64,000 bases of DNA, from the IMG/VR virus record IMGVR_UViG_3300024239_000014, positions 185,641 through 249,640 of that record; one strand, written 5' to 3'. The notes under the pieces were generated by a model. The model was not told where the DNA came from. It ran no database searches and saw nothing but the letters and a program-made list of their open reading frames with translations. The translations under genes were made by a program, and so were the position numbers. Positions 2,883 through 61,741 of the stretch are shown here, one piece after another (position 1 is the first letter of the stretch; every line of letters starts with the position of its first letter).

Positions 2883-3110
2883 TTAGCCCTCGCTGGGCTC
2901 GCCACCGTTGCCGGCGTACTTGCTGTACGCATAGGCTGCACCGCCGATCACGGCGGCAGCCAAGGCACCGTACCCCACGACCTTGGCGGTCGTGGCCCAC
3001 CAAGAAGACTTGGCAGGTGCTGCGGTAACTGTCGGCATGGGAACAGCGGCGGCTACCGCCTCGGCGGTGGCGGCGATGGCTTCAGCGGCGTTGGTGTTGG
3101 TCTGAGACAT
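2883..3110 (-). CDS. small Ala-rich single-pass membrane protein (75 aa)
   Basis: GAGG RBS; VVGYGALAAAVIGGAAYAY segment; GC3-rich codons. Confidence 0.8.
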   Translation of the reverse strand: MSQTNTNAAEAIAATAEAVAAAVPMPTVTAAPAKSSWWATTAKVVGYGALAAAVIGGAAYAYSKYAGNGGEPSEG

Positions 3111-3742: not shown

Positions 3743-3771
3743 GCGGCATAAGAGAGCCCCGAAGGGCTCTC
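3743..3771 (-). terminator. capsid gene terminator
   Basis: GAGAGCCC-TTCG-GGGCTCTC followed by TTATGCCGC. Confidence 0.8.
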
Positions 3772-3816
3772 CCATGACTTTACCATCGTCTGTCGAGGGT
3801 TGCTCACCCCGGCAGA

Positions 3817-5988
3817 TTAGGCCTGCTCTTTGGTCGGAACAGCCTTCAGCGCCACCAGAGCCTTGTCCAGGTTGGTCACGTTGATCACGAACCACACCGG
3901 CAGGTTGTGGACGTGAACGTTACGCGGCTGTACAGACAGCTGGTTGTAAGTGGCGTTGCCACGGCTCACCGGACCGGTGCTGACCAGTTCAGGGATCCAG
4001 TAGTGGTTACCGGAGCTGAGCGGGCAGAAGCCGCTGCGACCCTTGCGGGTGAAGGTGCCGATGATCTTGTTCTGCATGCGAACGTCCGGGGTAGCCAGGA
4101 CTTCGAAGTCCATGCCGATACCAGCGGTGCGCGGGTCACCCTGGATCATCATGTACTGTTGCAGGTTGATATCGGTACCCAGCAGCAGGGTCGGCTTGTC
4201 TTCGGCACCACCGCTGACCTGCTGGAGGGCAGGCAGGTAGTTGGATTCGACGACGGCGCGGTAGGCCACTTCGCGTACGGTGTTCAGGATCAGCGAGTTC
4301 AAGTCGGCCACGCGGTCGGTAGAACGCAGGGTCTGTACCTGAGCAAAGAGATCCAGAGCCACTTCGGCGTAGAACGGGGTTACCAGCCAACGACCAGCAC
4401 CTTCCAGACTGGCGCTGGAATCAGCACCGGCACCGATCAGGTGTTTGTTCTGGGCGCAGAAAGCCTTCAGACCTTCGAGGTAGTTCAGCTGTGCGGCGAT
4501 AGCACGGTTGCTGGTGGCGATGCGAGTCGCGTTCACCAGGTCGTCGAGGCCGACAGAGACGTTCTCTTCAGTGGTGGGCACCTGGACGCTGATCGGAGCG
4601 CCGACCGGGATCGGGGTGTAGTCGGTCTTGTAGCCGCGGTCCAGCAGCAGGCCAGCGGTGCGGCGGTTGCTGTTGATACGGTTGGCTTTCAGATCGATAC
4701 CGACAACGGTGAACACCAGGTCAGCGAGGATCGGGGCCAGGGTGGCATCGGCCGGAGAGATCAGGTCTTTGGTCACGCGGTGATAGGCTTTGCCAGCCGA
4801 CACCGAACCATCGAACTTGTAGTGGCCGGTCTGCACGTTCACGCTACCAGACAGCGACAGATCCAGGTGGATCTGGAACTCAGTGGTGTTCAGGTCAGAC
4901 AGCGGAGCAGGCTGAGCGCCAGCCGGGTTCTTGGTGTCCTTGTCGACGGCCAGTTCGCTGGTCATGGCGGACAGGGTCAGCTCGTAGGCGTCACCAGCAG
5001 GCGCTTTGTACATTTCGAAGCGCTTGAGGTTGGCGGTCGGGAACTTCACGACGCCGACTTCGGTGCCGGCACCGTTGGCCACGCGAACGTACACAGCAGA
5101 AACGGTGATGGCTTCCTGGATCTGATCGGTCTGGTCGTAGGTACCTTCCAGAGCGGCCGGGTTCTGGCTCAGGGCCAGCAGGTCACCAGCGACGCCGATG
5201 GCGATCGGAGCGGTGTTGTAGGTAACACCGTTGACTTCTTTGGCCACCGGGGCCACGAGCGAAGCGGCGACGAACTTGTTCAGGTTGCTGTTGTCAGCCT
5301 GTACGTGCGGGATCAGAGCAGTCGACGGAGCGTCGAGCAGCTTGCTGTCGCGGTAGGCTTCGAGGATGTTCTTGAAGTTCCAGGACTTGACGTCGCCGGA
5401 CAGAGCGCGCTGAGCGCCTTTGAACACGCGGATCACCGGAACTTTGGTAACCACGGCAACCTGGTCAGGGGTCTGCACCACAGTCGGGTAGAAACCTTCG
5501 GCGTAGTTGTCCTGACGGGCAGCGCCGTAGTTCCAGGCAGCAGAGTAGGCAGCCACAACGGTCAGGTCGCGGTTGTCAAAAGCTTCCATGGCGACGTCGG
5601 TGAAGGACACGTCCATGGCGCCGTGGATACCCACGGTGGTCGGCATGATAACGTTGGCACCTTCCATCGACATGGCGGCAGTGGCCAGAGCTTTGGCCTG
5701 GTAACGGTTGGCGCTGGCGGCGCCCATGAAGGCGATCTGAGCGGCTTCGAGAGCAACGGAGTCAGCAGCAGCATCACCAGCGAAGAGACCTTTCAGCTCA
5801 TTCTGGATGTTGCGGCCGGAGGCGACCAGGGCGCTGCGAGCAGTAGGAGTGGCAGATTCGAGCGACAGCAGGGCGCCAACGTCGTCGGCACCAACCACGA
5901 CATCACCACGTTTCTGGAGAGAAACGAGTTCATCAGCAGCCTGACCAATGGACTTGGTCGCGGCGTTCTGGGTATTGAAAATCGACAT
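3817..5988 (-). CDS. major capsid protein (phiKZ gp120-like)
   Basis: 723 aa; strong GC3 codon bias; N-terminal propeptide with A/S-X-E sites (SLES, ALEA, SMEG, AMEAF); FYPTVV and RQD motifs; divergent from the DnaB gene as in phiKZ gp118-120. Confidence 0.9.
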   Translation of the reverse strand: MSIFNTQNAATKSIGQAADELVSLQKRGDVVVGADDVGALLSLESATPTARSALVASGRNIQNELKGLFAGDAAADSVALEAAQIAFMGAASANRYQAKALATAAMSMEGANVIMPTTVGIHGAMDVSFTDVAMEAFDNRDLTVVAAYSAAWNYGAARQDNYAEGFYPTVVQTPDQVAVVTKVPVIRVFKGAQRALSGDVKSWNFKNILEAYRDSKLLDAPSTALIPHVQADNSNLNKFVAASLVAPVAKEVNGVTYNTAPIAIGVAGDLLALSQNPAALEGTYDQTDQIQEAITVSAVYVRVANGAGTEVGVVKFPTANLKRFEMYKAPAGDAYELTLSAMTSELAVDKDTKNPAGAQPAPLSDLNTTEFQIHLDLSLSGSVNVQTGHYKFDGSVSAGKAYHRVTKDLISPADATLAPILADLVFTVVGIDLKANRINSNRRTAGLLLDRGYKTDYTPIPVGAPISVQVPTTEENVSVGLDDLVNATRIATSNRAIAAQLNYLEGLKAFCAQNKHLIGAGADSSASLEGAGRWLVTPFYAEVALDLFAQVQTLRSTDRVADLNSLILNTVREVAYRAVVESNYLPALQQVSGGAEDKPTLLLGTDINLQQYMMIQGDPRTAGIGMDFEVLATPDVRMQNKIIGTFTRKGRSGFCPLSSGNHYWIPELVSTGPVSRGNATYNQLSVQPRNVHVHNLPVWFVINVTNLDKALVALKAVPTKEQA

Positions 5989-6144
5989 AACGGATTTCTT
6001 CCTTCTTCGATGGTAAAGACCGGCTCAGTAGCGAAGCCTCATAAAAGAAGAGCTACGCGTCGAGTCGTTTTGTGAACTAAACCGCTGGGAGCTGTAATAA
6101 GTAAAACCTTACTACGGCTATAACCGAGCAGTGAGAGCAACCCT

Positions 6145-6148
6145 CATA
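6145..6148 (-). promoter_or_regulatory. putative late promoter TATG for the capsid gene (TSS at G 6145)
   Basis: phiKZ late promoters carry TATG over the TSS. Here the G coincides with the first base of the 5' panhandle arm. Confidence 0.45.
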
Positions 6149-11228: not shown

Positions 11229-11798
11229 TCACGACCGCCATTCACGATGACGATGACTGAGGTTGGCGATCTGATCGGACAGCGGCGAATGCTGCGACTG
11301 ACGGATGTTATCGGCCACAGTCTGCTGCCGCACGGTAGGTGGAAGGGCCGATTGAGAAATGAACGAAAAGATCGAATTCGTTTCGCCTTTGCGCGACTCA
11401 GCAATCAAGCCACGGGCCATGAGGTACAATCGATCTGCCAGCGCATCAAGCATTCGGAGGTCGTCGAGCGGCGGTTCACGAACACTGAGCGGGTTTCTGG
11501 CTTCTCTCAACCAGTCATCCAAATGCTCTTTGATGATGTCGTACATCCTCACCGAATCGCGAATGTCGTACAGCTCAATTTTTACCCCCTCGGCGTGCCA
11601 GCGGGCAATCTTGCTGATGGTGGTGGTGTGTTCGCACATCTCCGCAGCACATTCACGGTCCAGATCACGAAACCCTGAAATGGCAACACCGACTTTTTCG
11701 ATTTCACCTTCCAGGTAAGTCGCATACTGCGGGACGCGCACACGGAACGGGTAATGGAACAACTTGTAAGCGGCGTTGTGTGGTTGGTTAACAGTCAT
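11229..11798 (-). CDS. conserved protein (phiKZ gp100-like)
   Basis: 189 aa; synteny and size. Confidence 0.6.
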   Translation of the reverse strand: MTVNQPHNAAYKLFHYPFRVRVPQYATYLEGEIEKVGVAISGFRDLDRECAAEMCEHTTTISKIARWHAEGVKIELYDIRDSVRMYDIIKEHLDDWLREARNPLSVREPPLDDLRMLDALADRLYLMARGLIAESRKGETNSIFSFISQSALPPTVRQQTVADNIRQSQHSPLSDQIANLSHRHREWRS

Positions 11799-14824: not shown

Positions 14825-14859
14825 CGGCAAAAAGGTGGGGGCCGAAGCCCCCACCCTCA
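14825..14859 (-). terminator. intrinsic terminator
   Basis: GGTGGGGGC-TTCG-GCCCCCACC followed by TTTTTGCCG. Confidence 0.75.
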
Positions 14860-14954
14860 ACCAACCACACAATCCAGAGAGAAAGACGTCGCGGTATCGC
14901 CACCAACGATAACACGATTAGACAGGACGGAGAAGACCTGCCTATATCATTACA

Positions 14955-16220
14955 TCACTTCAATCCGCCGGTCAAATTGCGCATAGCCAAACGCAAAACC
15001 GAACGACCCACCTGCGACAGGTAGTTAGCGTACTCAAGCTGAACTTTGGAGGTCCACGATGAATACGTATTGATGAAGTCGACTGCGGTGCGGTAATAGG
15101 TTACCGGTCCTTTACGAGCTTCATCACCACTGCGCATGTTTGCCACTCGCTTGCGAACGGATTCCAATGCCGCCTCAGCACGACGGCTCTGATCAAGCAC
15201 GTCGCTACTGGTGAAGGTTTTTCCTTTAGCAATGACATCAGCCATCGCTGTGGCCATGGCCGCCACCCCTTCAGCAAAGAACGCCGGAATGACCGCTTCG
15301 GTGTCGTACGCCCGCAGTTGTTCGTAAGTGTCAGTAAAGACGATCTTCGAACGCCGGATCTTCTCAGCGGTGATCAGCACATTACCTTGCTGATTGGTAT
15401 CCCAGTTCACTGAAAAGAAACTGTGATTCCAGAGCAACGCTTCTGATGCCTGCACCTTGCCAGTCGGACCTGCATCAAAGCGGGTGTCAGAAGCCACAGC
15501 ACGAAAACAGAGGGCTGCGACAGGATTGGCCACCCCTTGGGTCATGGCGTTGCATGCGGCAATCAGGCTGGCTTCAGGTTTGGCGATATCAAACCCATTG
15601 ATGCTGTCAATGAGTCGTTTACCGACATTCGGCATCTGCTTGCTGTAATGGACAAACAAGGCATCTGCAAAAGTGTTCAGTTTATCAATCGCGTTGGTAA
15701 CGTCAGAATGAGTCGCCGGGAGCTTATTACCTGCTGCGAGGTAGCGAGCTTCAATCCCTAAACGAATTTCGCCTTTAGGGACGAGGTGGGTACGGCGTTT
15801 TGCCGCCTCGGCAGCGCGACGCAGTCCTCGCTCGCAATTCGTAAGCAGGTCCCAGAGTCCGGTAGCTGCTTTACGAATCATTGCCCACAACCGCTTAAGG
15901 CCGTCGATGATCTTCTCGAGAATCATCAGCGCACCGTCAACGAAACCTTCAGCGCTGTAAGACGTCATGACAGCATCGGGATTCAGGCCAGGTTCATCCA
16001 GCCCTACGATCGCCAACATACGTGCCTTATCGGCGCTCAGATCCAAACCTTCCAGCACCAGCGCTACTGCTTCGAGATTGAATGACTTACGCGAGGCTTC
16101 ATCCAAGGTATTGTGCATCTGATCGACGCGTTTAATCTCTTCGGTGGCTTCAGTGGCCTTGTCGACGAGAGCATCTTCTTCCAACACGTCGATGTACGTA
16201 TCAGGATTAAGTTCAGACAT
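14955..16220 (-). CDS. internal head protein with cleavable propeptide (phiKZ gp93-97 family-like)
   Basis: Likelier start MSELNPD at 16220 (GAGG). Acidic N-terminus, YSAEG site, then helical LKRLWAMIRK segment. Confidence 0.65.
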   Translation of the reverse strand: MSELNPDTYIDVLEEDALVDKATEATEEIKRVDQMHNTLDEASRKSFNLEAVALVLEGLDLSADKARMLAIVGLDEPGLNPDAVMTSYSAEGFVDGALMILEKIIDGLKRLWAMIRKAATGLWDLLTNCERGLRRAAEAAKRRTHLVPKGEIRLGIEARYLAAGNKLPATHSDVTNAIDKLNTFADALFVHYSKQMPNVGKRLIDSINGFDIAKPEASLIAACNAMTQGVANPVAALCFRAVASDTRFDAGPTGKVQASEALLWNHSFFSVNWDTNQQGNVLITAEKIRRSKIVFTDTYEQLRAYDTEAVIPAFFAEGVAAMATAMADVIAKGKTFTSSDVLDQSRRAEAALESVRKRVANMRSGDEARKGPVTYYRTAVDFINTYSSWTSKVQLEYANYLSQVGRSVLRLAMRNLTGGLK

Positions 16221-16226
16221 AGTGTC

Positions 16227-16265
16227 CTCGCTGACACAGAGGGAGGCCATTAGGCCTCCCTCTGG
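16227..16265 (-). terminator. hairpin between head protein genes
   Basis: AGAGGGAGGCC-loop-GGCCTCCCTCT (16238-16263); no U-tract. Confidence 0.5.
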
Positions 16266-40203: not shown

Positions 40204-40244
40204 GCGGCATAAGGCGGATGGGAATCCCATCCGCCGTTTATGGG
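40204..40244 (-). terminator. intrinsic terminator
   Basis: GGCGGATGGG/CCCATCCGCC followed by TTATGCCGC. Confidence 0.75.
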
Positions 40245-46332: not shown

Positions 46333-46372
46333 AAAAAAGAAGGGAGGGCCAGAAGGCCCTCCCACTATGCCG
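46333..46372. terminator. bidirectional terminator
   Basis: GGGAGGGCC-AGAA-GGCCCTCCC; + strand tail CTATGCCG; A-run upstream. Confidence 0.75.
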
Positions 46373-47830
46373 TTACCGGTTATAAATCGGAATAGGCACA
46401 CCCTGACCAGGGTATCCAGCAGGAATTGCACGACCATCCGGACCCCGCATTACCTGAGGCTGTTGTGGATAACCGGCAGGCTGAGGGTACAATGGTTGTT
46501 GCGGATACAACGGCGCTTGCGGATAACCGCCAGGATAACCTTGGGGTGCTTGCACCTGAGGATATCCCATCACCTGCGGTGCACCGTAAGGTGCGACAGG
46601 AGCGGCTGGCGTATTAGCAGGAATGCCAAACCAACCAGCACGCGGGTCCTGTTGGACAGGTTGCTGGTAATTCAACATCGGCTGCGGATACGGTGATGCC
46701 ACTACCGGTGGTGCCATATTCAGCGCACCAGGACGATACGGCTGAACACCAGTCGGACTAGGTGGAGCCACCTGTTCCTGCTGGAGTCTGTCCCACTCTT
46801 CCTGTACATCCACTTGCGGTACGACATGCATCGGACGCTCCGGCGCTGGAGCAGAGGGTTGTACAGGCCGTGCCAATTCCACCTTGTCTGCTGCCATTCG
46901 GCCCAGTTGCCGTTGCCGTGGTGTAGCTGCTGGTTGCGCCTTTTCTTCCTCGGTTACTTGGCCGGTGTTGTAGTCCAGCGCTTCCAGGATATTCGAATAA
47001 CCGGTCAAGTCTTCCAGTTCCGATTCCCAGTTGGTGTCGAACTCCAACAGTGAGATTTCAGAATCCATGTTGGCAAACAGACGAATGTGGTGATTCATCC
47101 GCTTAACCAACTTGAATGCTGACCCCATCAGACACTCCAGGTACGGCGCCGTCATCTTGTTGGTGCCGTAGTGGTACGCCTCGAGCGTTTCAGGTTCGCC
47201 GTCGATCACCCCAAAGAGGTAATAGAACAACGCCTTAATCGCACCGTAGTCACCGACGTTACACTTAACACCGAAGATGGTTTTGGCTTCGTCATCCATG
47301 GCATCAAAGACTGGGAAGTTCACCACACAGAGACGGTGATACTTGACACCTTTCAGCATCCCAGGACGCTTCAGGTACATGTTCACGATCAGTTTGTGGT
47401 TATCGGCGCCCAGTTGGTCAAGGATCTTGCCCATGGTCACCATGGTCGATTCCTTGGCCTTCGGCATCAGTGTCAGGAATTCCGATGCCTTAGCACCCAG
47501 ACGTTTGTGGCAGCTATGGTCAGCAGCCACTTTCGTCATGAACTCCAACAACTGACTGGCTGTGTGGTTAATGCGAAAGATAATCAGCGAGCGCAGTCGC
47601 TTCAGTACTTCCGATTCACCGCGGTGCGGCTTTTCTGACATCGGATGGAATGCGATGTAGTTATCCCAATCCGGGTTACGGAGGAATTCGCGGGTGGGAA
47701 GACGGAGTTTCTTCCCACCAACGGTAACGGGTTCTTCATCGCCATCCAGAGTGGCGACCACCACACCGTCGGCGTTAGGTGCGACACCTGCCAGTCCCAA
47801 GATGGCTTTATAGAAGTCGAGCAATTCCAT
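46373..47830 (-). CDS. conserved core protein (phiKZ gp70 position) with P/Q/Y/G low-complexity tail
   Basis: 485 aa; IAFHPMSE...GESEV motif; follows the PicA-like gene. Confidence 0.7.
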   Translation of the reverse strand: MELLDFYKAILGLAGVAPNADGVVVATLDGDEEPVTVGGKKLRLPTREFLRNPDWDNYIAFHPMSEKPHRGESEVLKRLRSLIIFRINHTASQLLEFMTKVAADHSCHKRLGAKASEFLTLMPKAKESTMVTMGKILDQLGADNHKLIVNMYLKRPGMLKGVKYHRLCVVNFPVFDAMDDEAKTIFGVKCNVGDYGAIKALFYYLFGVIDGEPETLEAYHYGTNKMTAPYLECLMGSAFKLVKRMNHHIRLFANMDSEISLLEFDTNWESELEDLTGYSNILEALDYNTGQVTEEEKAQPAATPRQRQLGRMAADKVELARPVQPSAPAPERPMHVVPQVDVQEEWDRLQQEQVAPPSPTGVQPYRPGALNMAPPVVASPYPQPMLNYQQPVQQDPRAGWFGIPANTPAAPVAPYGAPQVMGYPQVQAPQGYPGGYPQAPLYPQQPLYPQPAGYPQQPQVMRGPDGRAIPAGYPGQGVPIPIYNR

Positions 47831-51041: not shown

Positions 51042-51071
51042 GAATAACGCGCAGCCCAAACAGGCTGCGCG
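51042..51071 (-). terminator. hairpin after the chmC-like gene (overlaps panhandle 3' arm)
   Basis: CGCGCAGCC/GGCTGCGCG 9-bp stem followed by TTATT. Confidence 0.6.
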
Positions 51072-51112: not shown

Positions 51113-52078
51113 TTAAAAGGAGGTGTCCTCATCAAAGACGGCTGGTTCTGGCTGGTAGTTGTTGGCCTGGTTGCTTTTCCAGTCGCCACCTGATTGCTGG
51201 GACTGTTGCTGATAACCCCCACCCTGGCGTTGGTATCCACCACCGCCACCACCTTGGCGCTGCTGGTAGCCACCACCACCACCGCCGCCTTTCCAACCAC
51301 CACCGCCGTTGTTACCTTTCCAGCCACCACCGCCACCACCTTGGCGTTGGTATCCGCCACCACCGCCTTTCCAGTTACCACCACCGCCACCACCACCCTG
51401 GCGGTTGTTGTTCCAGTTACCACCGCCTTGACGCTGATAACCACCACCACCGCCAGACGGTTGTTCCTGAGGTGTGCTCTTAGGCGCAGCATCTGGATCA
51501 GACTGGAGGCGATCGGTGTAATTCACTGCCAAAACGGAGGCCACCAGGTTTTCCATCAGGATAATCCAACCGGTGGTAAACCATTCGGACACCAGAGCTG
51601 GATCAAGCTGACGACCATCCGAACCGGCGAGGTCGTGGTATTCAGTCGGACGCATTACGAACTGCAGCCGGCGTGACTTATCAGCATTCAGCAAACCGAT
51701 GAACAGTGTCTTGTCCTGATCACGACCGTAAATGACGGTGGTGTCCAGAACAATCGGGTCGCGACCTGTTTTGCAGGTGATAGCGCGTCGACCGAAGTCG
51801 CGATCAGCGACCGCCTTCTTCATATCGGCCAACAGGGCATAAGCGGTAGCCGCATCCATCTTGGCTTCCAGTAGCCAATCGCGACCATCGTGGTCAGGAA
51901 CCCCCGACCAGGCACGCAGACGAACCTGATTAGCAATGCTCATGACACCCAACATAGCTCGCTTCGAGCCGCCGGGCTGAACATCGCCAATAATCCGAAG
52001 TTTGTAGTCATCCAGCATGTTGCGTTTACGCGCACCGTCGGCGGTTGGAGCTGCGGGTGCTGCGTTTTCATTACTCAT
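51113..52078 (-). CDS. chmC: ChmC-like nucleus-associated RNA/ssDNA-binding protein (phiKZ gp67 position)
   Basis: Likelier start MSNENAA at 52078. ~200-aa folded domain, long Gly/Gln-rich IDR, acidic tail DEDTSF; located directly upstream of the gp68-like gene. Confidence 0.65.
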   Translation of the reverse strand: MSNENAAPAAPTADGARKRNMLDDYKLRIIGDVQPGGSKRAMLGVMSIANQVRLRAWSGVPDHDGRDWLLEAKMDAATAYALLADMKKAVADRDFGRRAITCKTGRDPIVLDTTVIYGRDQDKTLFIGLLNADKSRRLQFVMRPTEYHDLAGSDGRQLDPALVSEWFTTGWIILMENLVASVLAVNYTDRLQSDPDAAPKSTPQEQPSGGGGGYQRQGGGNWNNNRQGGGGGGGNWKGGGGGYQRQGGGGGGWKGNNGGGGWKGGGGGGGYQQRQGGGGGGYQRQGGGYQQQSQQSGGDWKSNQANNYQPEPAVFDEDTSF

Positions 52079-58407: not shown

Positions 58408-58419
58408 TTTCCAGTTGCT

Positions 58420-60267
58420 TTACCAGCGAGATGAACCGGCGTAGCCGACGTTGGTCTGGGTGCCGAACTGCTGGGTCTGATGCAGCTGCTGGCCGATACC
58501 GCTGTTGCCGAGGCCCAGCAGACCGAGGTTCTGACGAACCTGCGGCACGCCGTAGAAGCTACCGCGAGAATCGTTCAGACGGATGCCAGCACCCACTTCC
58601 TTCATGGCAGCAGCCAGTGCGGACAGGAAGTCCGGGGTGAAGGTCAGGTGGTAGCCATACCCGGCCAGCTCGTAACCAGGCAGCAGAGCACCGAGCAGGC
58701 GAGCACGTTCAGCCAGGCAAACCGATGCAGGACGACCGGCACGGTTTTCGATGGTTTCGATGTAGCTCGCACGTGCGTGCGGGTCCTGCTGAGTCAGGGC
58801 CAGGATCGCCAGGTGGTCGATATCGCGGATATCCCGCTTCTCGCCGTTGGCGTCGGTGTAGGTACCGAGCAGGATCTGACGACGCAGGGTAACGACTTGC
58901 GGACCCTGTTTCCAGTGGTTGCTGAACGCACCGCCGGTCAGGTTGTTCGCAGCATTCAGGATGGCGGTAGTCGCGGCCTGATTGCCCATCGCCGAGCTGA
59001 TGAACTCGTTGTAGATCGCACTGTACGGGCCAGTGGGATCGACCTGCAACGAAATGATCAGGTTACGGTGGAAAAAGTCGTTGAAGAACGCGCCCATTTC
59101 CTCAGGGGACATGGCGCCGCCTTTGAGACCCTTCACCGGAGCGAACGGAGCGCCCGGCTGTGGCTGATACTCGGTACCCAGGATGCCGACGTCGCGCTGG
59201 TTGATGTCGTTCTTGCTGCCCTTGCCACCCATACCACGCGGCTGGTAAGCCCAGGACCACAGAGCGTTCTCTTCCAGCAGACCAGCAGACACCAGTGCCA
59301 TCAGCACGCGGTCGAGATGCATGTCAACCGACAGCGTGGAGATGTCGGTGATGACCGCTTCGGCCATGTACGCCTTGGTGGAACCCGGCTGCACGATGCC
59401 GTTGACGACCTGCTGACCCACCGGGCCAACGAAGTTGGTGTCAACGTAACCATGCACACGGAACAGGTCACAACCGGCGTTGGCGATGGTACCCGGCTTG
59501 GTGTTTGCCGGACTGGCGCCAACCGAGATCACGACATCAGCACGCACCGGACGACCAACAGCATCAGCGGTCTGCACCAGCGGGAACTGAACAGTACCGT
59601 TCAGCTGTGCCGGTTCTTCCGGAGTACGCAGGGCGATGGCCAGGTTCAGCGGCATGGCTTCGTCGGCCTTGGCGGTGATGTTGGCAAACAGCACGTGGGC
59701 CAGGCGGCGCATGGCGGTTTCGTCGCTGGTATCGATATCGCTCGGCACCACGAGGCAGCCGGAATCGATGACTTCGGCTACGTTGGCGATGCTGTCTTTC
59801 AGGCGACGCTCAACTGCTGACCAGAAGTCGTTGTTCCAGCAGTCGCCGGTGGTGACAGGCAGTTCGTACTGCTGGCCCATGTACTGCTCGACACGCGGTT
59901 GGATGCGGCCGGTCGGTGCCTGGGTCATGATGACGCTGACAAACAGTTTCTTGTCAGCACGGAACTTGCACACGGCAAGCGCGTTGGCCGGGAGGCGGTT
60001 GGCGGCTGCATCCAGCGGCATGGCATGCCAGCCAGCGCCAGCTTCTTTCAGGAAGGTGGACAAACCTTCATGCAGGCGGCGCAGGGTCTCGGCGTCGGCC
60101 ACCGGACGAACCGGAGTGTTACCCGTGCCAGCCAGGGCGAAAATCGAACCCACTGCGCGAGTAGCCACGTCGGCAGCTACCGACTGGGCGGGCGCACCGG
60201 TATCGACCGGAGCACGAGTCGGGGTCTGTGCAGCAGCGGCAGGTTTGGTTTTATCGTTCAAGGCCAT
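58420..60267 (-). CDS. chmA: chimallin, phage nucleus shell protein (phiKZ gp54-like)
   Basis: 615 aa with flexible A/P N-terminus and G/Q C-terminus; GYVDTNF...AVITD...LMAL...W..AYQP pattern; lies between the gp52-like gene and nvRNAP beta'; early promoter; strong codon bias. Confidence 0.85.
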   Translation of the reverse strand: MALNDKTKPAAAAQTPTRAPVDTGAPAQSVAADVATRAVGSIFALAGTGNTPVRPVADAETLRRLHEGLSTFLKEAGAGWHAMPLDAAANRLPANALAVCKFRADKKLFVSVIMTQAPTGRIQPRVEQYMGQQYELPVTTGDCWNNDFWSAVERRLKDSIANVAEVIDSGCLVVPSDIDTSDETAMRRLAHVLFANITAKADEAMPLNLAIALRTPEEPAQLNGTVQFPLVQTADAVGRPVRADVVISVGASPANTKPGTIANAGCDLFRVHGYVDTNFVGPVGQQVVNGIVQPGSTKAYMAEAVITDISTLSVDMHLDRVLMALVSAGLLEENALWSWAYQPRGMGGKGSKNDINQRDVGILGTEYQPQPGAPFAPVKGLKGGAMSPEEMGAFFNDFFHRNLIISLQVDPTGPYSAIYNEFISSAMGNQAATTAILNAANNLTGGAFSNHWKQGPQVVTLRRQILLGTYTDANGEKRDIRDIDHLAILALTQQDPHARASYIETIENRAGRPASVCLAERARLLGALLPGYELAGYGYHLTFTPDFLSALAAAMKEVGAGIRLNDSRGSFYGVPQVRQNLGLLGLGNSGIGQQLHQTQQFGTQTNVGYAGSSRW

Positions 60268-61699: not shown

Positions 61700-61738
61700 A
61701 GGAACGGGCCCAGGGGAAACCCCTGGGCCCTATGCCGG
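61692..61738. terminator. bidirectional terminator
   Basis: GGGCCCAGGG-loop-CCCTGGGCCC; tails TATGCCGG (+) and TTTATGCCAG (-). Confidence 0.8.
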
Positions 61739-61741
61739 CAA

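What the first reader, a model, noticed from the sequence alone, without database searches (positions are those of the whole stretch)
3795..6148. Capsid mRNA is closed by a 5'-end/3'-UTR panhandle (first of three such genes)
Seen: on the minus strand the leader begins, at the G of a TATG late-promoter motif (6145), with GAGGGUUGCUC-UC-AC-UG-CUCGG (6145-6124). Four bases after the capsid stop lies CCGGG-GU-GAGCAACCCUC (3812-3795). They form 11 perfect bp + 2 bp + 5 bp, about 2.3 kb apart, just before the terminator. The U.G pair (6127/3809) works only on the mRNA strand, favouring RNA pairing over a DNA inverted repeat. The same architecture surrounds chmC (13 bp) and chmA (10 bp) but was not evident by eye at ordinary genes. 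Inference: a shared closed-loop signal on abundant transcripts, acting in export from the phage nucleus or early vesicle, 5'-end protection from RNase E, RNase III maturation, ChmC binding or ribosome recycling. I know no description of this in Chimalliviridae, but cannot search the literature.
Basis: partly seen in the sequence, partly recalled or inferred. Interest (0 to 1): 0.85.

Follow-up and report, generated by a model that had tools for sequence, protein, structure and literature searches.

The report
Capsid mRNA ends pair, conserved
In this nucleus-forming jumbo phage and about a third of its relatives, the untranslated start and end of the major-capsid messenger RNA carry matching sequences that have stayed complementary while changing in sequence. 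This points to a conserved long-range RNA contact not previously described for these phages.

Summary
6145-6135 (minus strand, starting at the G of a TATG) is the perfect complement of 3805-3795, with the stated 2+5 bp extension.

It is not chance. A second perfect 11-mer links the same two UTRs (6018-6008 with 3788-3778). Both arms of helix A are sequence-identical in two relatives whose capsids are only 60-62% identical.

A 5' arm just upstream of the ribosome-binding site pairs with a 3' arm abutting the terminator hairpin. Across 53 non-redundant chimallivirus capsid loci this positional complementarity is strongly enriched:
- 17/53 loci at p<=0.05.
- Cognate versus non-cognate z=9.4.
- The 5'UTR is the unique best partner in 10/53 loci, against 0.8 expected.

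At least 12 different arm sequences occur, with compensatory changes. The helix is present in cultured phages FLC9 and LucasX and not detected in phiKZ or PhiPA3.

The chmA and chmC "panhandles" are not kept in relatives and look like chance. A different second helix (14872-14857 with 11791-11776) shows two compensatory G-C to U-A changes.

Function is inferred, not shown. Stabilisation or closed-loop formation in cis is most likely. A trans-acting, sRNA-like role is the main rival.

The parts
6145..6148 (-). TATG late-promoter core P1; G6145 is the inferred transcription start
   Evidence: Sequence. The last G of TATG is +1 for phiKZ nvRNAP (PMC4666361). The block CATTAACTATG is invariant in L002 and L003.
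6124..6145 (-). Arm A: 5'-terminal 11 nt of the P1 leader (6145-6135) plus its interrupted extension
   Evidence: I17. Invariant in L002 and L003 except C6128 to U, which keeps a wobble. Cofold pair probability about 0.99 for the P1 transcript.
3795..3812 (-). Arm A': 3'UTR partner of arm A, starting 4 nt after the stop
   Evidence: The 16-nt block GGGGTGAGCAACCCTC is identical in L002 and L003 while flanking 3'UTR sequence diverged.
6040..6043 (-). Second TATG (candidate promoter P2) inside the leader
   Evidence: The TTT(A)TATGA(A/G)G block is conserved in L002 and L003. Multiple capsid promoters are reported for 201phi2-1 and phiKZ (PMC11512511).
6008..6018 (-). Arm B: CUUUACCAUCG, 1 nt upstream of the AGAAGGAAG ribosome-binding region
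   Evidence: I16. Positional counterpart of the family-wide 5' arm. Cofold pair probability about 0.99 for the P2 transcript.
3817..5988 (-). Major capsid protein gene (723 aa, PF25620 PhiKZ_MCP)
3778..3788 (-). Arm B': CGAUGGUAAAG, ending 1 nt before the terminator hairpin
   Evidence: In L002 it is partly kept in the same register: 8 of 9 pairs, with two A-to-G changes giving U.G. An alternative 7-bp register also exists.
3747..3776 (-). Terminator hairpin CAUGGGAGAGCCC-UUCG-GGGCUCUCUUAUG, followed by CCG
   Evidence: (I15). The stem covaries in L002 (GGGAGGGC/GCCCTCCC). The CATA-stem-loop-stem-TTTATGCCG form recurs across the family.
14857..14872 (-). Second long-range helix, arm 1: UUGUGUGGUUGGUUGA. 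It abuts the terminator (14858-14831) of the upstream head-protein gene.
11776..11791 (-). Second long-range helix, arm 2: UUAACCAACCACACAA, at codons 3-8 of gene 11229-11798
   Evidence: L002 has 13 bp at the homologous sites, with two G-C to U-A compensatory changes.
   Evidence: It lies upstream of the nearby TATG motifs.
51042..51054 (-). chmC downstream 13-mer; it is the descending arm of a local hairpin
   Evidence: The 98% relative L096 carries a T-to-C change that breaks the 13-mer.
58408..58417 (-). chmA 3' 10-mer; it overlaps the base of the chmA terminator
   Evidence: No counterpart in L090.

Best explanation
The capsid mRNA carries selected base-pairing between its 5' leader and its 3' UTR.

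In this phage there are two helices. Helix A joins the first 11 nt of the transcript made from the upstream TATG promoter to the segment just after the stop codon. Helix B joins an 11-nt segment next to the ribosome-binding site to the segment that abuts the terminator hairpin. Helix B is the local version of an element found at the same two positions in roughly a third of chimallivirus capsid genes.

Shown here: the complementarity, its positional conservation, and its covariation.

Inferred: the pairing forms within one mRNA molecule. This is plausible because these phages transcribe inside a ribosome-free nucleus. It would tie the 5' end or leader to the terminator stem. That would shield the most abundant late message from 5'-end- or leader-dependent endonuclease attack and bring stop and start codons together. 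The model is the 14-bp 5'/3'-UTR contact that protects the B. subtilis hbs mRNA.

The stated confidence covers the whole statement including the cis stabilising function. That the pairing itself is real and selected I put at about 0.85.
For: Window:
- Two perfect 11-mers link the capsid UTRs.
- They are the two best partners of the 3'UTR in the whole 5-kb locus (L004).
- The motifs are unique in 64 kb.

Close relatives (60-62% capsid identity): both arms of A are invariant amid diverged UTRs. B is partly kept, with wobble-compatible changes.

Family (53 loci; 5' window -75..-8 against 32 nt before the terminator):
- 17 loci at p<=0.05 and 9 at p<=0.01 against dinucleotide shuffles.
- Inverted beats the direct-orientation control, Wilcoxon p=7.7e-5.
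- Cognate mean 18.5 versus non-cognate 14.7, 0 of 20,000 permutations as high.
- The 5'UTR is the unique best partner in 10/53 loci versus 0.79 expected.

At least 12 unrelated arm sequences sit at the same positions. Compensatory A-U/G-C, A-U/U-A and G-C/A-U changes occur within one clade. Cofold gives pair probability >=0.8 in 18/22 loci, and 0.99 for A in the P1 transcript and B in the P2 transcript.

Precedent: hbs (PMC5737220).
Against: - No transcript ends, structure probing or functional data exist for this phage. P1 and P2 are inferred from TATG motifs only.
- Helix A shows no covariation, because its arms are invariant in the only two relatives.
- A and B cross each other (order A, B, A', B'), so they are either alternative or pseudoknotted.
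- The helix is not detected in phiKZ, PhiPA3, Psa21, PS119XW, Noxifer, SPN3US, PCH45 and others. It is therefore not essential to the family.
- Loci are phylogenetically related, so p-value counts overstate independence.
- The G.U versus A.C asymmetry expected for sense-strand RNA is only a trend.
- The 'arm plus terminator' layout fits a trans-acting RNA equally well. The second helix in the window targets another gene's initiation region.
Confidence: 0.5

Rival explanations
1. The 3' arm plus terminator hairpin acts as a 3'UTR-borne regulatory RNA. It works either as part of the mRNA or after processing. It pairs in trans with leaders or initiation regions, giving feedback on capsid translation or cross-regulation between late genes. 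The model is OppZ/CarZ-type autoregulatory 3'UTR sRNAs.
For: - The layout 'seed directly 5' of a stem-loop with a U-rich tail' is the sRNA layout.
- The second helix in the window joins the 3'UTR of the gene 14955-16250 to codons 3-8 of gene 11229-11798. Arm 1 lies upstream of that operon's own TATG. Two compensatory changes are seen in L002.
- In L012 and L062 the 5' arm reaches into the ribosome-binding region.
- Precedent: PMC7398697.
Against: - In the largest clade the 5' arm lies at -47..-36, outside a ribosome footprint, so direct translational repression is not the conserved effect.
- Both capsid arms are in one transcription unit, which favours cis pairing.
- Negative feedback on the most needed virion protein is not obviously useful.
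- No capsid 3'UTR sRNA was reported in the 201phi2-1 ONT-cappable-seq data, although that phage group lacks the helix.
Confidence: 0.2
2. The paired flanks form a double-strand-specific RNase (RNase III) site. The site excises or matures the capsid message from longer late transcripts, as the flanks of 16S/23S rRNA do.
For: - Helices A and B sit 6 nt apart on the 3'UTR and could stack into about 22 bp.
- Some relatives show extended imperfect duplexes of 20-30 nt (L029, L041, L043).
- icaR 5'/3'-UTR pairing recruits RNase III (PMC3868564).
Against: - Most helices are 8-13 bp, below the roughly 20 bp usually required. This is my own knowledge of RNase III substrates.
- Cleavage would remove the protective terminator hairpin.
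- No processing data exist.
Confidence: 0.1
3. The arms are DNA-level inverted repeats. They would be two inverted copies of a binding site for a phage DNA-binding protein, or a recombination site, co-evolving with that protein's specificity.
For: - Perfect inverted repeats are strand-symmetric.
- The sense-versus-antisense (G.U versus A.C) test is not significant.
- Concerted change of two sites could mimic covariation.
Against: - Several helices depend on U.G pairs that exist only in the mRNA sense: L047 with four, L040/L054/FLC9, and L051.
- The arms are anchored to RNA landmarks (the ribosome-binding site and the terminator stem), not to fixed DNA spacing.
- No recombinase or transposase is nearby, and no other copies exist in the window.
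Confidence: 0.05
4. Helix A as read by the first stage is a chance 11-mer between two blocks that are each conserved for other reasons. The 5' block would be conserved for promoter or initial-transcribed-sequence function, and the 3' block for some unrelated signal.
For: - About 1 in 100 non-cognate flank pairs reach 11 bp.
- phiKZ late promoters need downstream sequence (PMC4666361), which could explain conservation of the first 20 nt.
- There is no covariation in A.
Against: - Complementarity of 11+2 bp between two short conserved blocks is itself improbable. I estimate roughly 1e-5 for blocks of 16-25 nt.
- A second helix links the same UTRs, and the family-wide signal shows this gene is under selection for 5'-3' pairing.
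- Post-stop coding is excluded: there is no synonymous change in GGGGTGAGCAACCCT, and L002 stops after 10 codons.
Confidence: 0.1

Closest known systems
B. subtilis hbs mRNA 5'/3'-UTR interaction (Braun, Durand & Condon 2017, PMC5737220)
   Same: A short (14 bp) long-range helix joins the leader and 3'UTR of a very abundant protein's mRNA. It limits endonuclease cleavage in the leader and couples stability to translation.
   Different: hbs is a single bacterial gene of about 0.4 kb. Here the loop is 2.2 kb, the element is in a phage, it recurs with covariation across a virus family, and in this phage there are two helices. The function is untested.
S. aureus icaR 5'/3'-UTR pairing (Ruiz de los Mozos et al. 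2013, PMC3868564)
   Same: The 3'UTR pairs with the 5'UTR of the same mRNA.
   Different: The icaR 3'UTR covers the Shine-Dalgarno sequence, blocks translation and triggers RNase III decay. Here the 5' arm usually lies upstream of the ribosome-binding site, and the gene needs maximal expression.
Autoregulatory 3'UTR-derived sRNAs OppZ/CarZ (Hoyos et al. 2020, PMC7398697)
   Same: A pairing segment lies in the 3'UTR just upstream of an intrinsic terminator and is complementary to a site in its own operon.
   Different: Those are RNase E-released, Hfq-dependent, trans-acting repressors. Release, Hfq dependence and repression are all unknown here.
Cyclisation or panhandle elements of RNA viruses, and 3'CITE-5'UTR long-distance pairing of plant viruses (own knowledge)
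   Same: Short complementary 5' and 3' terminal sequences covary and close a long RNA into a loop to coordinate translation or replication.
   Different: Those act on RNA genomes. This is an mRNA of a dsDNA phage with no replication role.
Flanking-stem RNase III processing of rRNA precursors and T7 early mRNAs (own knowledge)
   Same: Sequences on both sides of a long RNA pair over kilobases.
   Different: Those stems are 20 bp or more and are cleaved. The helices here are mostly 8-13 bp, and no cleavage is known.

Membership tests
Bacterial mRNA 5'UTR-3'UTR base-pairing (hbs / icaR type) | Complementary segments lie in the 5' and 3' untranslated regions of one transcription unit | tested here: met
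   A: 6145-6135 with 3805-3795. B: 6018-6008 with 3788-3778. Transcript limits are inferred from the TATG and the terminator only.
Bacterial mRNA 5'UTR-3'UTR base-pairing (hbs / icaR type) | Complementarity is maintained in evolution (conservation or covariation) | tested here: met
   for the B-type helix. Helix A is conserved but invariant.
Bacterial mRNA 5'UTR-3'UTR base-pairing (hbs / icaR type) | Pairing occurs in vivo and changes stability or translation | not testable with these tools
   Only thermodynamic models are available.
icaR subtype | The 3'UTR arm covers the Shine-Dalgarno sequence | tested here: not met
   Arm B ends 1 nt before AGAAGGAAG. In the largest clade the arm lies at -47..-36. 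Only L012 and L062 overlap the ribosome-binding region.
3'UTR-derived autoregulatory sRNA (OppZ type) | A seed lies immediately upstream of an intrinsic terminator in the 3'UTR, complementary to a site in its own operon | tested here: met
   B' ends 1 nt before the hairpin. In relatives the gap is 0-15 nt in most loci (up to 23 nt in L062).
3'UTR-derived autoregulatory sRNA (OppZ type) | Endonucleolytic release of a stable small RNA, and Hfq dependence | not testable with these tools
   No expression data are available for this uncultured phage.
RNase III flanking-stem processing site | About 20 bp or more of near-continuous double strand formed by the flanks | tested here: inconclusive
   Two 11-bp helices are separated by 6 nt on one strand and 116 nt on the other. 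Some relatives have 20-30-nt imperfect duplexes, but most have 8-13 bp.
Mobile-element or invertase terminal inverted repeats | Inverted repeats bracket a recombinase or transposase or an invertible segment, with further copies in the genome | tested here: not met
   The bracketed gene is the capsid gene. No other copies occur in 64 kb. Neighbours are a helicase and small ORFs.
Known Rfam RNA families | A match at or above the gathering score | tested here: not met
   Only two sub-threshold hits inside the CDS.

The most novel reading that the evidence does not exclude
Because nucleus-forming phages make mRNA in a ribosome-free compartment, long-range 5'-3' pairing has become a general device for their late structural messages. 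A completed transcript would close on itself through an arm next to its terminator. This closed form would be what is licensed for export, protected, and efficiently re-initiated, so that only full-length capsid mRNA is translated. The second helix in this window and the independent arm turnovers would be instances of one such system.
Probability: 0.12. Interest if true: 0.9.

Novelty: new variant of a known kind. Interest (0 to 1): 0.72.

Why it matters
Long-range 5'/3'-UTR pairing in bacterial-type mRNAs is known from a handful of single genes. Here it appears as a conserved, covarying feature of the most highly expressed gene across many lineages of a virus family. That family's defining trait is the separation of transcription from translation, which is the condition under which kilobase-range mRNA folding can form unhindered.

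How chimallivirus mRNAs are stabilised, exported and translated is an open question, and ChmC binds near start codons without known specificity (PMC11077065). This gives a concrete RNA element to test. It is present in cultured phages (Burkholderia FLC9, Xanthomonas LucasX), with natural negative controls (phiKZ, PhiPA3).

It may also be useful for phage engineering and for designing expression cassettes in jumbo phages.

Tried and rejected
- **RNAduplex, all genes.** RNAduplex energies over 200x100-nt flanks for all 63 genes did not discriminate. Long gappy duplexes dominate.
- **Gapped local alignment.** A Smith-Waterman-like scan of pairing over 58 loci was also too noisy. I switched to contiguous helices and positional windows.
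- **Searches for closer relatives.** Megablast against GenBank phages gave no hit. IMG/VR and JGI metagenome scans returned only the source contig. Only L002 and L003 are available for helix A.
- **chmA.** Tested in L090 (53%) and L091 (98%), and rejected as conserved.
- **chmC.** Tested in L093/L094 (51-53%) and L096 (98%), and rejected.
- **Genome-wide 'seed before terminator' scan.** Over about 17 intergenic hairpins, only the 14858 terminator gave a standout partner. This is therefore not a rule for all terminators.
- **Sense versus antisense wobble test.** Trend only.
- **Post-stop coding as the reason arm A' is conserved.** Rejected.
- **The local CCTCAT/ATGAGG inverted repeat at the promoter.** Not conserved: it is CCCCCAT in L002.
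- **The count of structure pairs.** Not run, because the two arms are 2.2 kb apart and the structure string would have had to be typed at full length. Pair counts were done by script instead.
Full report
**What the window is.**
The 64-kb window comes from an uncultured jumbo phage, IMG/VR contig IMGVR_UViG_3300024239_000014 of 249,640 bp. It carries the chimallivirus hallmarks:
- a PhiKZ-type major capsid protein at 3817-5988(-);
- chimallin ChmA at 58420-60267(-);
- split RNA polymerase subunits and a DNA polymerase;
- a ChmC homologue at 51113-52078(-), which matches PHIKZ067. The ChmC paper equates PHIKZ067 with ChmC.

It is distant from every GenBank phage. There is no megablast hit, and the best capsid identity is about 34%.

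**Checking the observation.**
Read on the minus strand, TATG is at 6148-6145 and GAGGGTTGCTC at 6145-6135. The capsid stop is at 3819-3817. CCGGGGTGAGCAACCCTC is at 3812-3795. A terminator hairpin sits at 3776-3747.

A single 11-mer is weak evidence. The window holds 365 inverted repeats of 10 nt or more within 6 kb, as chance predicts. About 0.9% of non-cognate upstream/downstream flank pairs reach 11 bp.

Three further facts change that.
1. The same two UTRs share a second perfect 11-mer, CTTTACCATCG at 6018-6008 with CGATGGTAAAG at 3788-3778. I call this helix B. In a block scan of the whole 5-kb locus, the two best partners of the 3'UTR are exactly these two leader sites (L004).
2. Neither motif occurs elsewhere in the window.
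3. Conservation, described next.

**Close relatives.**
Only two close relatives exist in the collections searched: L002 (ENA, 139.6-kb contig, capsid 60% identical) and L003 (Logan, 62%). The IMG/VR and JGI scans returned only the source contig.

In both relatives the promoter-plus-arm block CATTAACTATGAGGGTTGCTCTCACTG is invariant. So is the 3' block GGGGTGAGCAACCCTC. The rest of each UTR has diverged heavily.

The 3' block is not conserved because it is coding. It shows no synonymous change, and the post-stop frame closes after 10 codons in L002.

Helix A therefore shows conservation of both arms but no covariation. Its 5-bp extension is weakened in L002, to U.G, U.G, C-G, G-C and one G/G mismatch.

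Helix B is partly kept in L002. In the window's register, 8 of 9 positions still pair. Two A-to-G changes in the 3' arm create U.G wobbles, and one A/C mismatch appears. A shifted 7-bp register, CATCGCC/GGCGGTG, gains two new C-G pairs. The terminator stem covaries cleanly.

**The family-wide signal.**
I fetched 80 capsid loci from IMG/VR with 1.5-kb flanks, giving 58 non-redundant loci. I added 17 cultured phages.

An unbiased scan compared 220 nt upstream with 130 nt downstream. Perfect complements of 10 nt or more occurred in 8/58 loci, against 2/58 and 3/58 for the direct-repeat and reverse-only controls.

Inspection revealed a common geometry. The 5' arm lies about -47 to -17 from the start codon, just upstream of the ribosome-binding site. 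The 3' arm abuts the 5' side of the terminator hairpin.

The arm sequences differ between lineages:
- window: CTTTACCATCG / CGATGGTAAAG
- L012: CAACCGGGA / TCCCGGTTG
- L036: CGCAGCAA / TTGCTGCG
- L020: GCCCATTA / TAATGGGC
- L039: GCCCCAAAAGC / GCTTTTGGGGC
- L040, L054 and FLC9: AGCCCCAATAGC / GCTGTTGGGGCT (one U.G)
- L041 and L043: AGCCCCAGT / ACTGGGGCT
- L022: ACCCAATAGTT / AGCTATTGGGT
- L047: 18 bp with four U.G
- L075: TTTTTCCAAC / GTTGGAAAAA
- LucasX: TAGGCTACTACTG / CAGTAGTAGCCTA
- L006 and L010: two nested helices

**Statistics.**
I used positional windows: -75..-8 on the 5' side, against 32 nt before the hairpin plus 6 nt on the 3' side.
- 17 of 53 loci have p<=0.05 and 9 have p<=0.01 against dinucleotide shuffles. 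About 2.7 and 0.5 are expected.
- With wider 3' windows, the inverted orientation beats the direct-orientation control, Wilcoxon p=7.7e-5.
- Pairing each 5' window with its own 3' window gives a mean score of 18.5, against 14.7 for other phages' windows. None of 20,000 permutations reached the observed mean (z=9.4). Scores of 24 or more occur in 12 cognate pairs against 1.0 expected.
- Within each locus, the 5'UTR window is the single best partner of the terminator-adjacent window among about 68 blocks in 10 of 53 loci, against 0.79 expected.

Within the largest clade, three helix positions show compensatory changes: A-U to G-C, A-U to U-A or U.G, and G-C to A-U.

A two-piece cofold model predicts the helix with mean pair probability of 0.8 or more in 18 of 22 loci.

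Caveats apply. The loci are related, so these counts are not independent events. My conservative reading is at least 10-12 independent arm types.

The helix is not detected in phiKZ, PhiPA3, Psa21, PS119XW, Noxifer, DT01, Eowyn, pEa_SNUABM_54, PhiEaH1, SPN3US, PCH45 or pVp-JHP1101. It is borderline in Goslar, Xoo-sp14 and RSL2. So this is a feature of roughly a third of lineages, not a family constant.

**RNA or DNA?**
Several helices rely on U.G pairs that exist only in the mRNA sense: L047, L040/L054/FLC9 and L051. The mean score gain from allowing G.U is 2.5, against 0.6 for the antisense-equivalent A.C. A sign test is not significant, however.

The anchoring to RNA landmarks (the ribosome-binding site and the terminator stem) and the wobble-compatible changes in L002 favour RNA. 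A DNA-level explanation is not formally excluded.

**The other two genes.**
The chmA complement (10 bp) and the chmC complement (13 bp) exist, but they do not behave like the capsid element.

For chmA, the leader arm overlaps a local hairpin, GGAAAC-GACG-GTTTCC. That hairpin is what is conserved in the 53% relative L090, which has no complement in its 3'UTR.

For chmC:
- The 5' arm lies upstream of the nearby TATG motifs.
- The 3' arm is the descending strand of a local GC-rich hairpin.
- A 98%-identical relative (L096) has a T-to-C change that breaks the long-range 13-mer while lengthening the local stem.
- The 51-53% relatives lack the complement altogether.

With 1.3 genes of 63 expected to reach 10 bp by chance, I treat both as unsupported.

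**A different second example.**
The longest intergenic-anchored inverted repeat in the window joins 14872-14857 (UUGUGUGGUUGGUUGA) to 11791-11776 (UUAACCAACCACACAA). That is 16 bp with one G.U.

Arm 1 abuts a canonical terminator (14858-14831) in the 3'UTR of the head-protein gene 14955-16250. It lies upstream of the next operon's TATG (14817-14814). Arm 2 covers codons 3-8 of gene 11229-11798, 3 kb downstream.

L002 has 13 bp at the homologous sites. Two of the window's G-C pairs are U-A there, which makes two compensatory double substitutions. This holds even though arm 2 is coding.

A genome-wide scan of the 24 nt before each of about 17 intergenic hairpins found no other standout partner. 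This example shows that 'arm plus terminator' can address a translation-initiation region of another gene. That is why I keep a trans-acting, sRNA-like model as the main rival.

**How it most likely works.**
Shown: the complementarity, its position, and its evolutionary maintenance.

Inferred, in steps:
1. By analogy with phiKZ, the G of TATG is +1 (PMC4666361). Capsid genes of 201phi2-1 and phiKZ have three stacked promoters (PMC11512511).
2. In the model, the long P1 transcript (from G6145) pairs its very 5' end with A' at probability about 0.99. Its ribosome-binding site is sequestered by an upstream CUUCUUU.
3. The short P2 transcript (TATG 6043-6040) lacks that anti-SD segment. It pairs B with B' at about 0.99 and leaves the ribosome-binding site open.
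4. A paired 5' terminus, and a leader tied to the terminator stem, would hinder 5'-end-dependent and leader-directed endonuclease attack. They would also place the stop codon near the start codon.

The closest documented mechanism is the 14-bp 5'/3'-UTR contact that protects the leader of the abundant hbs mRNA (PMC5737220). Transcription inside a ribosome-free phage nucleus (reviewed in PMC12908238, listed) removes the usual obstacle to kilobase-range mRNA folding.

I put about 0.85 on the pairing being real and selected. I put about 0.5 on cis stabilisation or closure being its role.

**Comparison with known systems and novelty.**
The element works like the hbs and icaR 5'/3'-UTR contacts, and like viral cyclisation elements. 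Its layout also matches 3'UTR-derived autoregulatory sRNAs.

It fails the icaR-specific feature of covering the Shine-Dalgarno sequence. It does not meet the length expected of an RNase III stem. It matches no Rfam family.

Full-text searches found transcript maps, ChmC eCLIP data and promoter studies for these phages, but no description of capsid 5'-3' UTR pairing. The library is limited to open-access papers and bioRxiv preprints.

I therefore rate it a new variant of a known kind. It is of real interest to phage RNA biology, and it is directly testable in FLC9 and LucasX.

Noticed in passing
L084 (PhiPA3) 2804-2893, L086 (phiKZ) 2930-3007, L087, L088, L085 (Goslar); all TGA-ending capsid loci among L004-L108: Major-capsid genes that end in TGA (n=20) are all followed in frame by at least 12 sense codons (median 18.5). 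The median is 7 for TAA-ending genes (n=54; Mann-Whitney p=3e-5). In phiKZ, PhiPA3, PS119XW and Psa21 the translated extension is conserved (AGKG..RYLEDG..), with fewest changes at codon position 2. This suggests a programmed TGA-readthrough C-terminal extension of the capsid protein. The window's capsid ends in TAA and shows no such signal.
   Followed up: partly
window 3776-3742(-); also 9306-9281(-), 61706-61740(+), 46342-46375(+), 40213-40243(+); most capsid loci: Terminator hairpins are framed by CATA before and T(T)TATG(C/T)CG after the stem. So the late-promoter core TATG sits in the tail of the terminator. Other hairpins in the window show the same box, or CGGCATA on the opposite strand. 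This could be a combined terminator and re-start signal for the phage RNA polymerase.
   Followed up: no
window 3716-3690(-), 60412-60391(-); L002 12293-12320; L090; downstream of the capsid terminator in PhiPA3, phiKZ, Psa21, PS119XW: A recurrent box GAATCC(N)AAAAAATCT(N4-6)CTATAT(T/C)AC occurs upstream of chmA and upstream of the small-ORF cluster after the capsid gene. It looks like the early (virion RNA polymerase) promoter consensus of this lineage.
   Followed up: no
window 51071-51047(-) versus L096 1496-1520: The loop of the hairpin after chmC is TGTTTG in the window and its reverse complement CAAACA in a 98%-identical relative, with the stem kept. This indicates a loop inversion within a palindrome.
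   Followed up: no
window 6060-5995(-): In the long capsid leader, a CUUCUUU segment (about 6050-6044) is predicted to pair with the AAGAAGG ribosome-binding region. The candidate P2 start (G6040) lies between them, so only the long transcript isoform would be self-masked.
   Followed up: partly
L006 and L010 (IMG/VR), capsid flanks: The leader segment CCACGTTAATGAAAGG can pair either with TTTCATTAAC (+31) or with TTAGCGTGG (about +122, next to a second hairpin). A further helix joins CGCATTTTTAACC (-94) to GGTTAAAAATGCG (+49). This gives a nested two-helix panhandle with an alternative partner.
   Followed up: no
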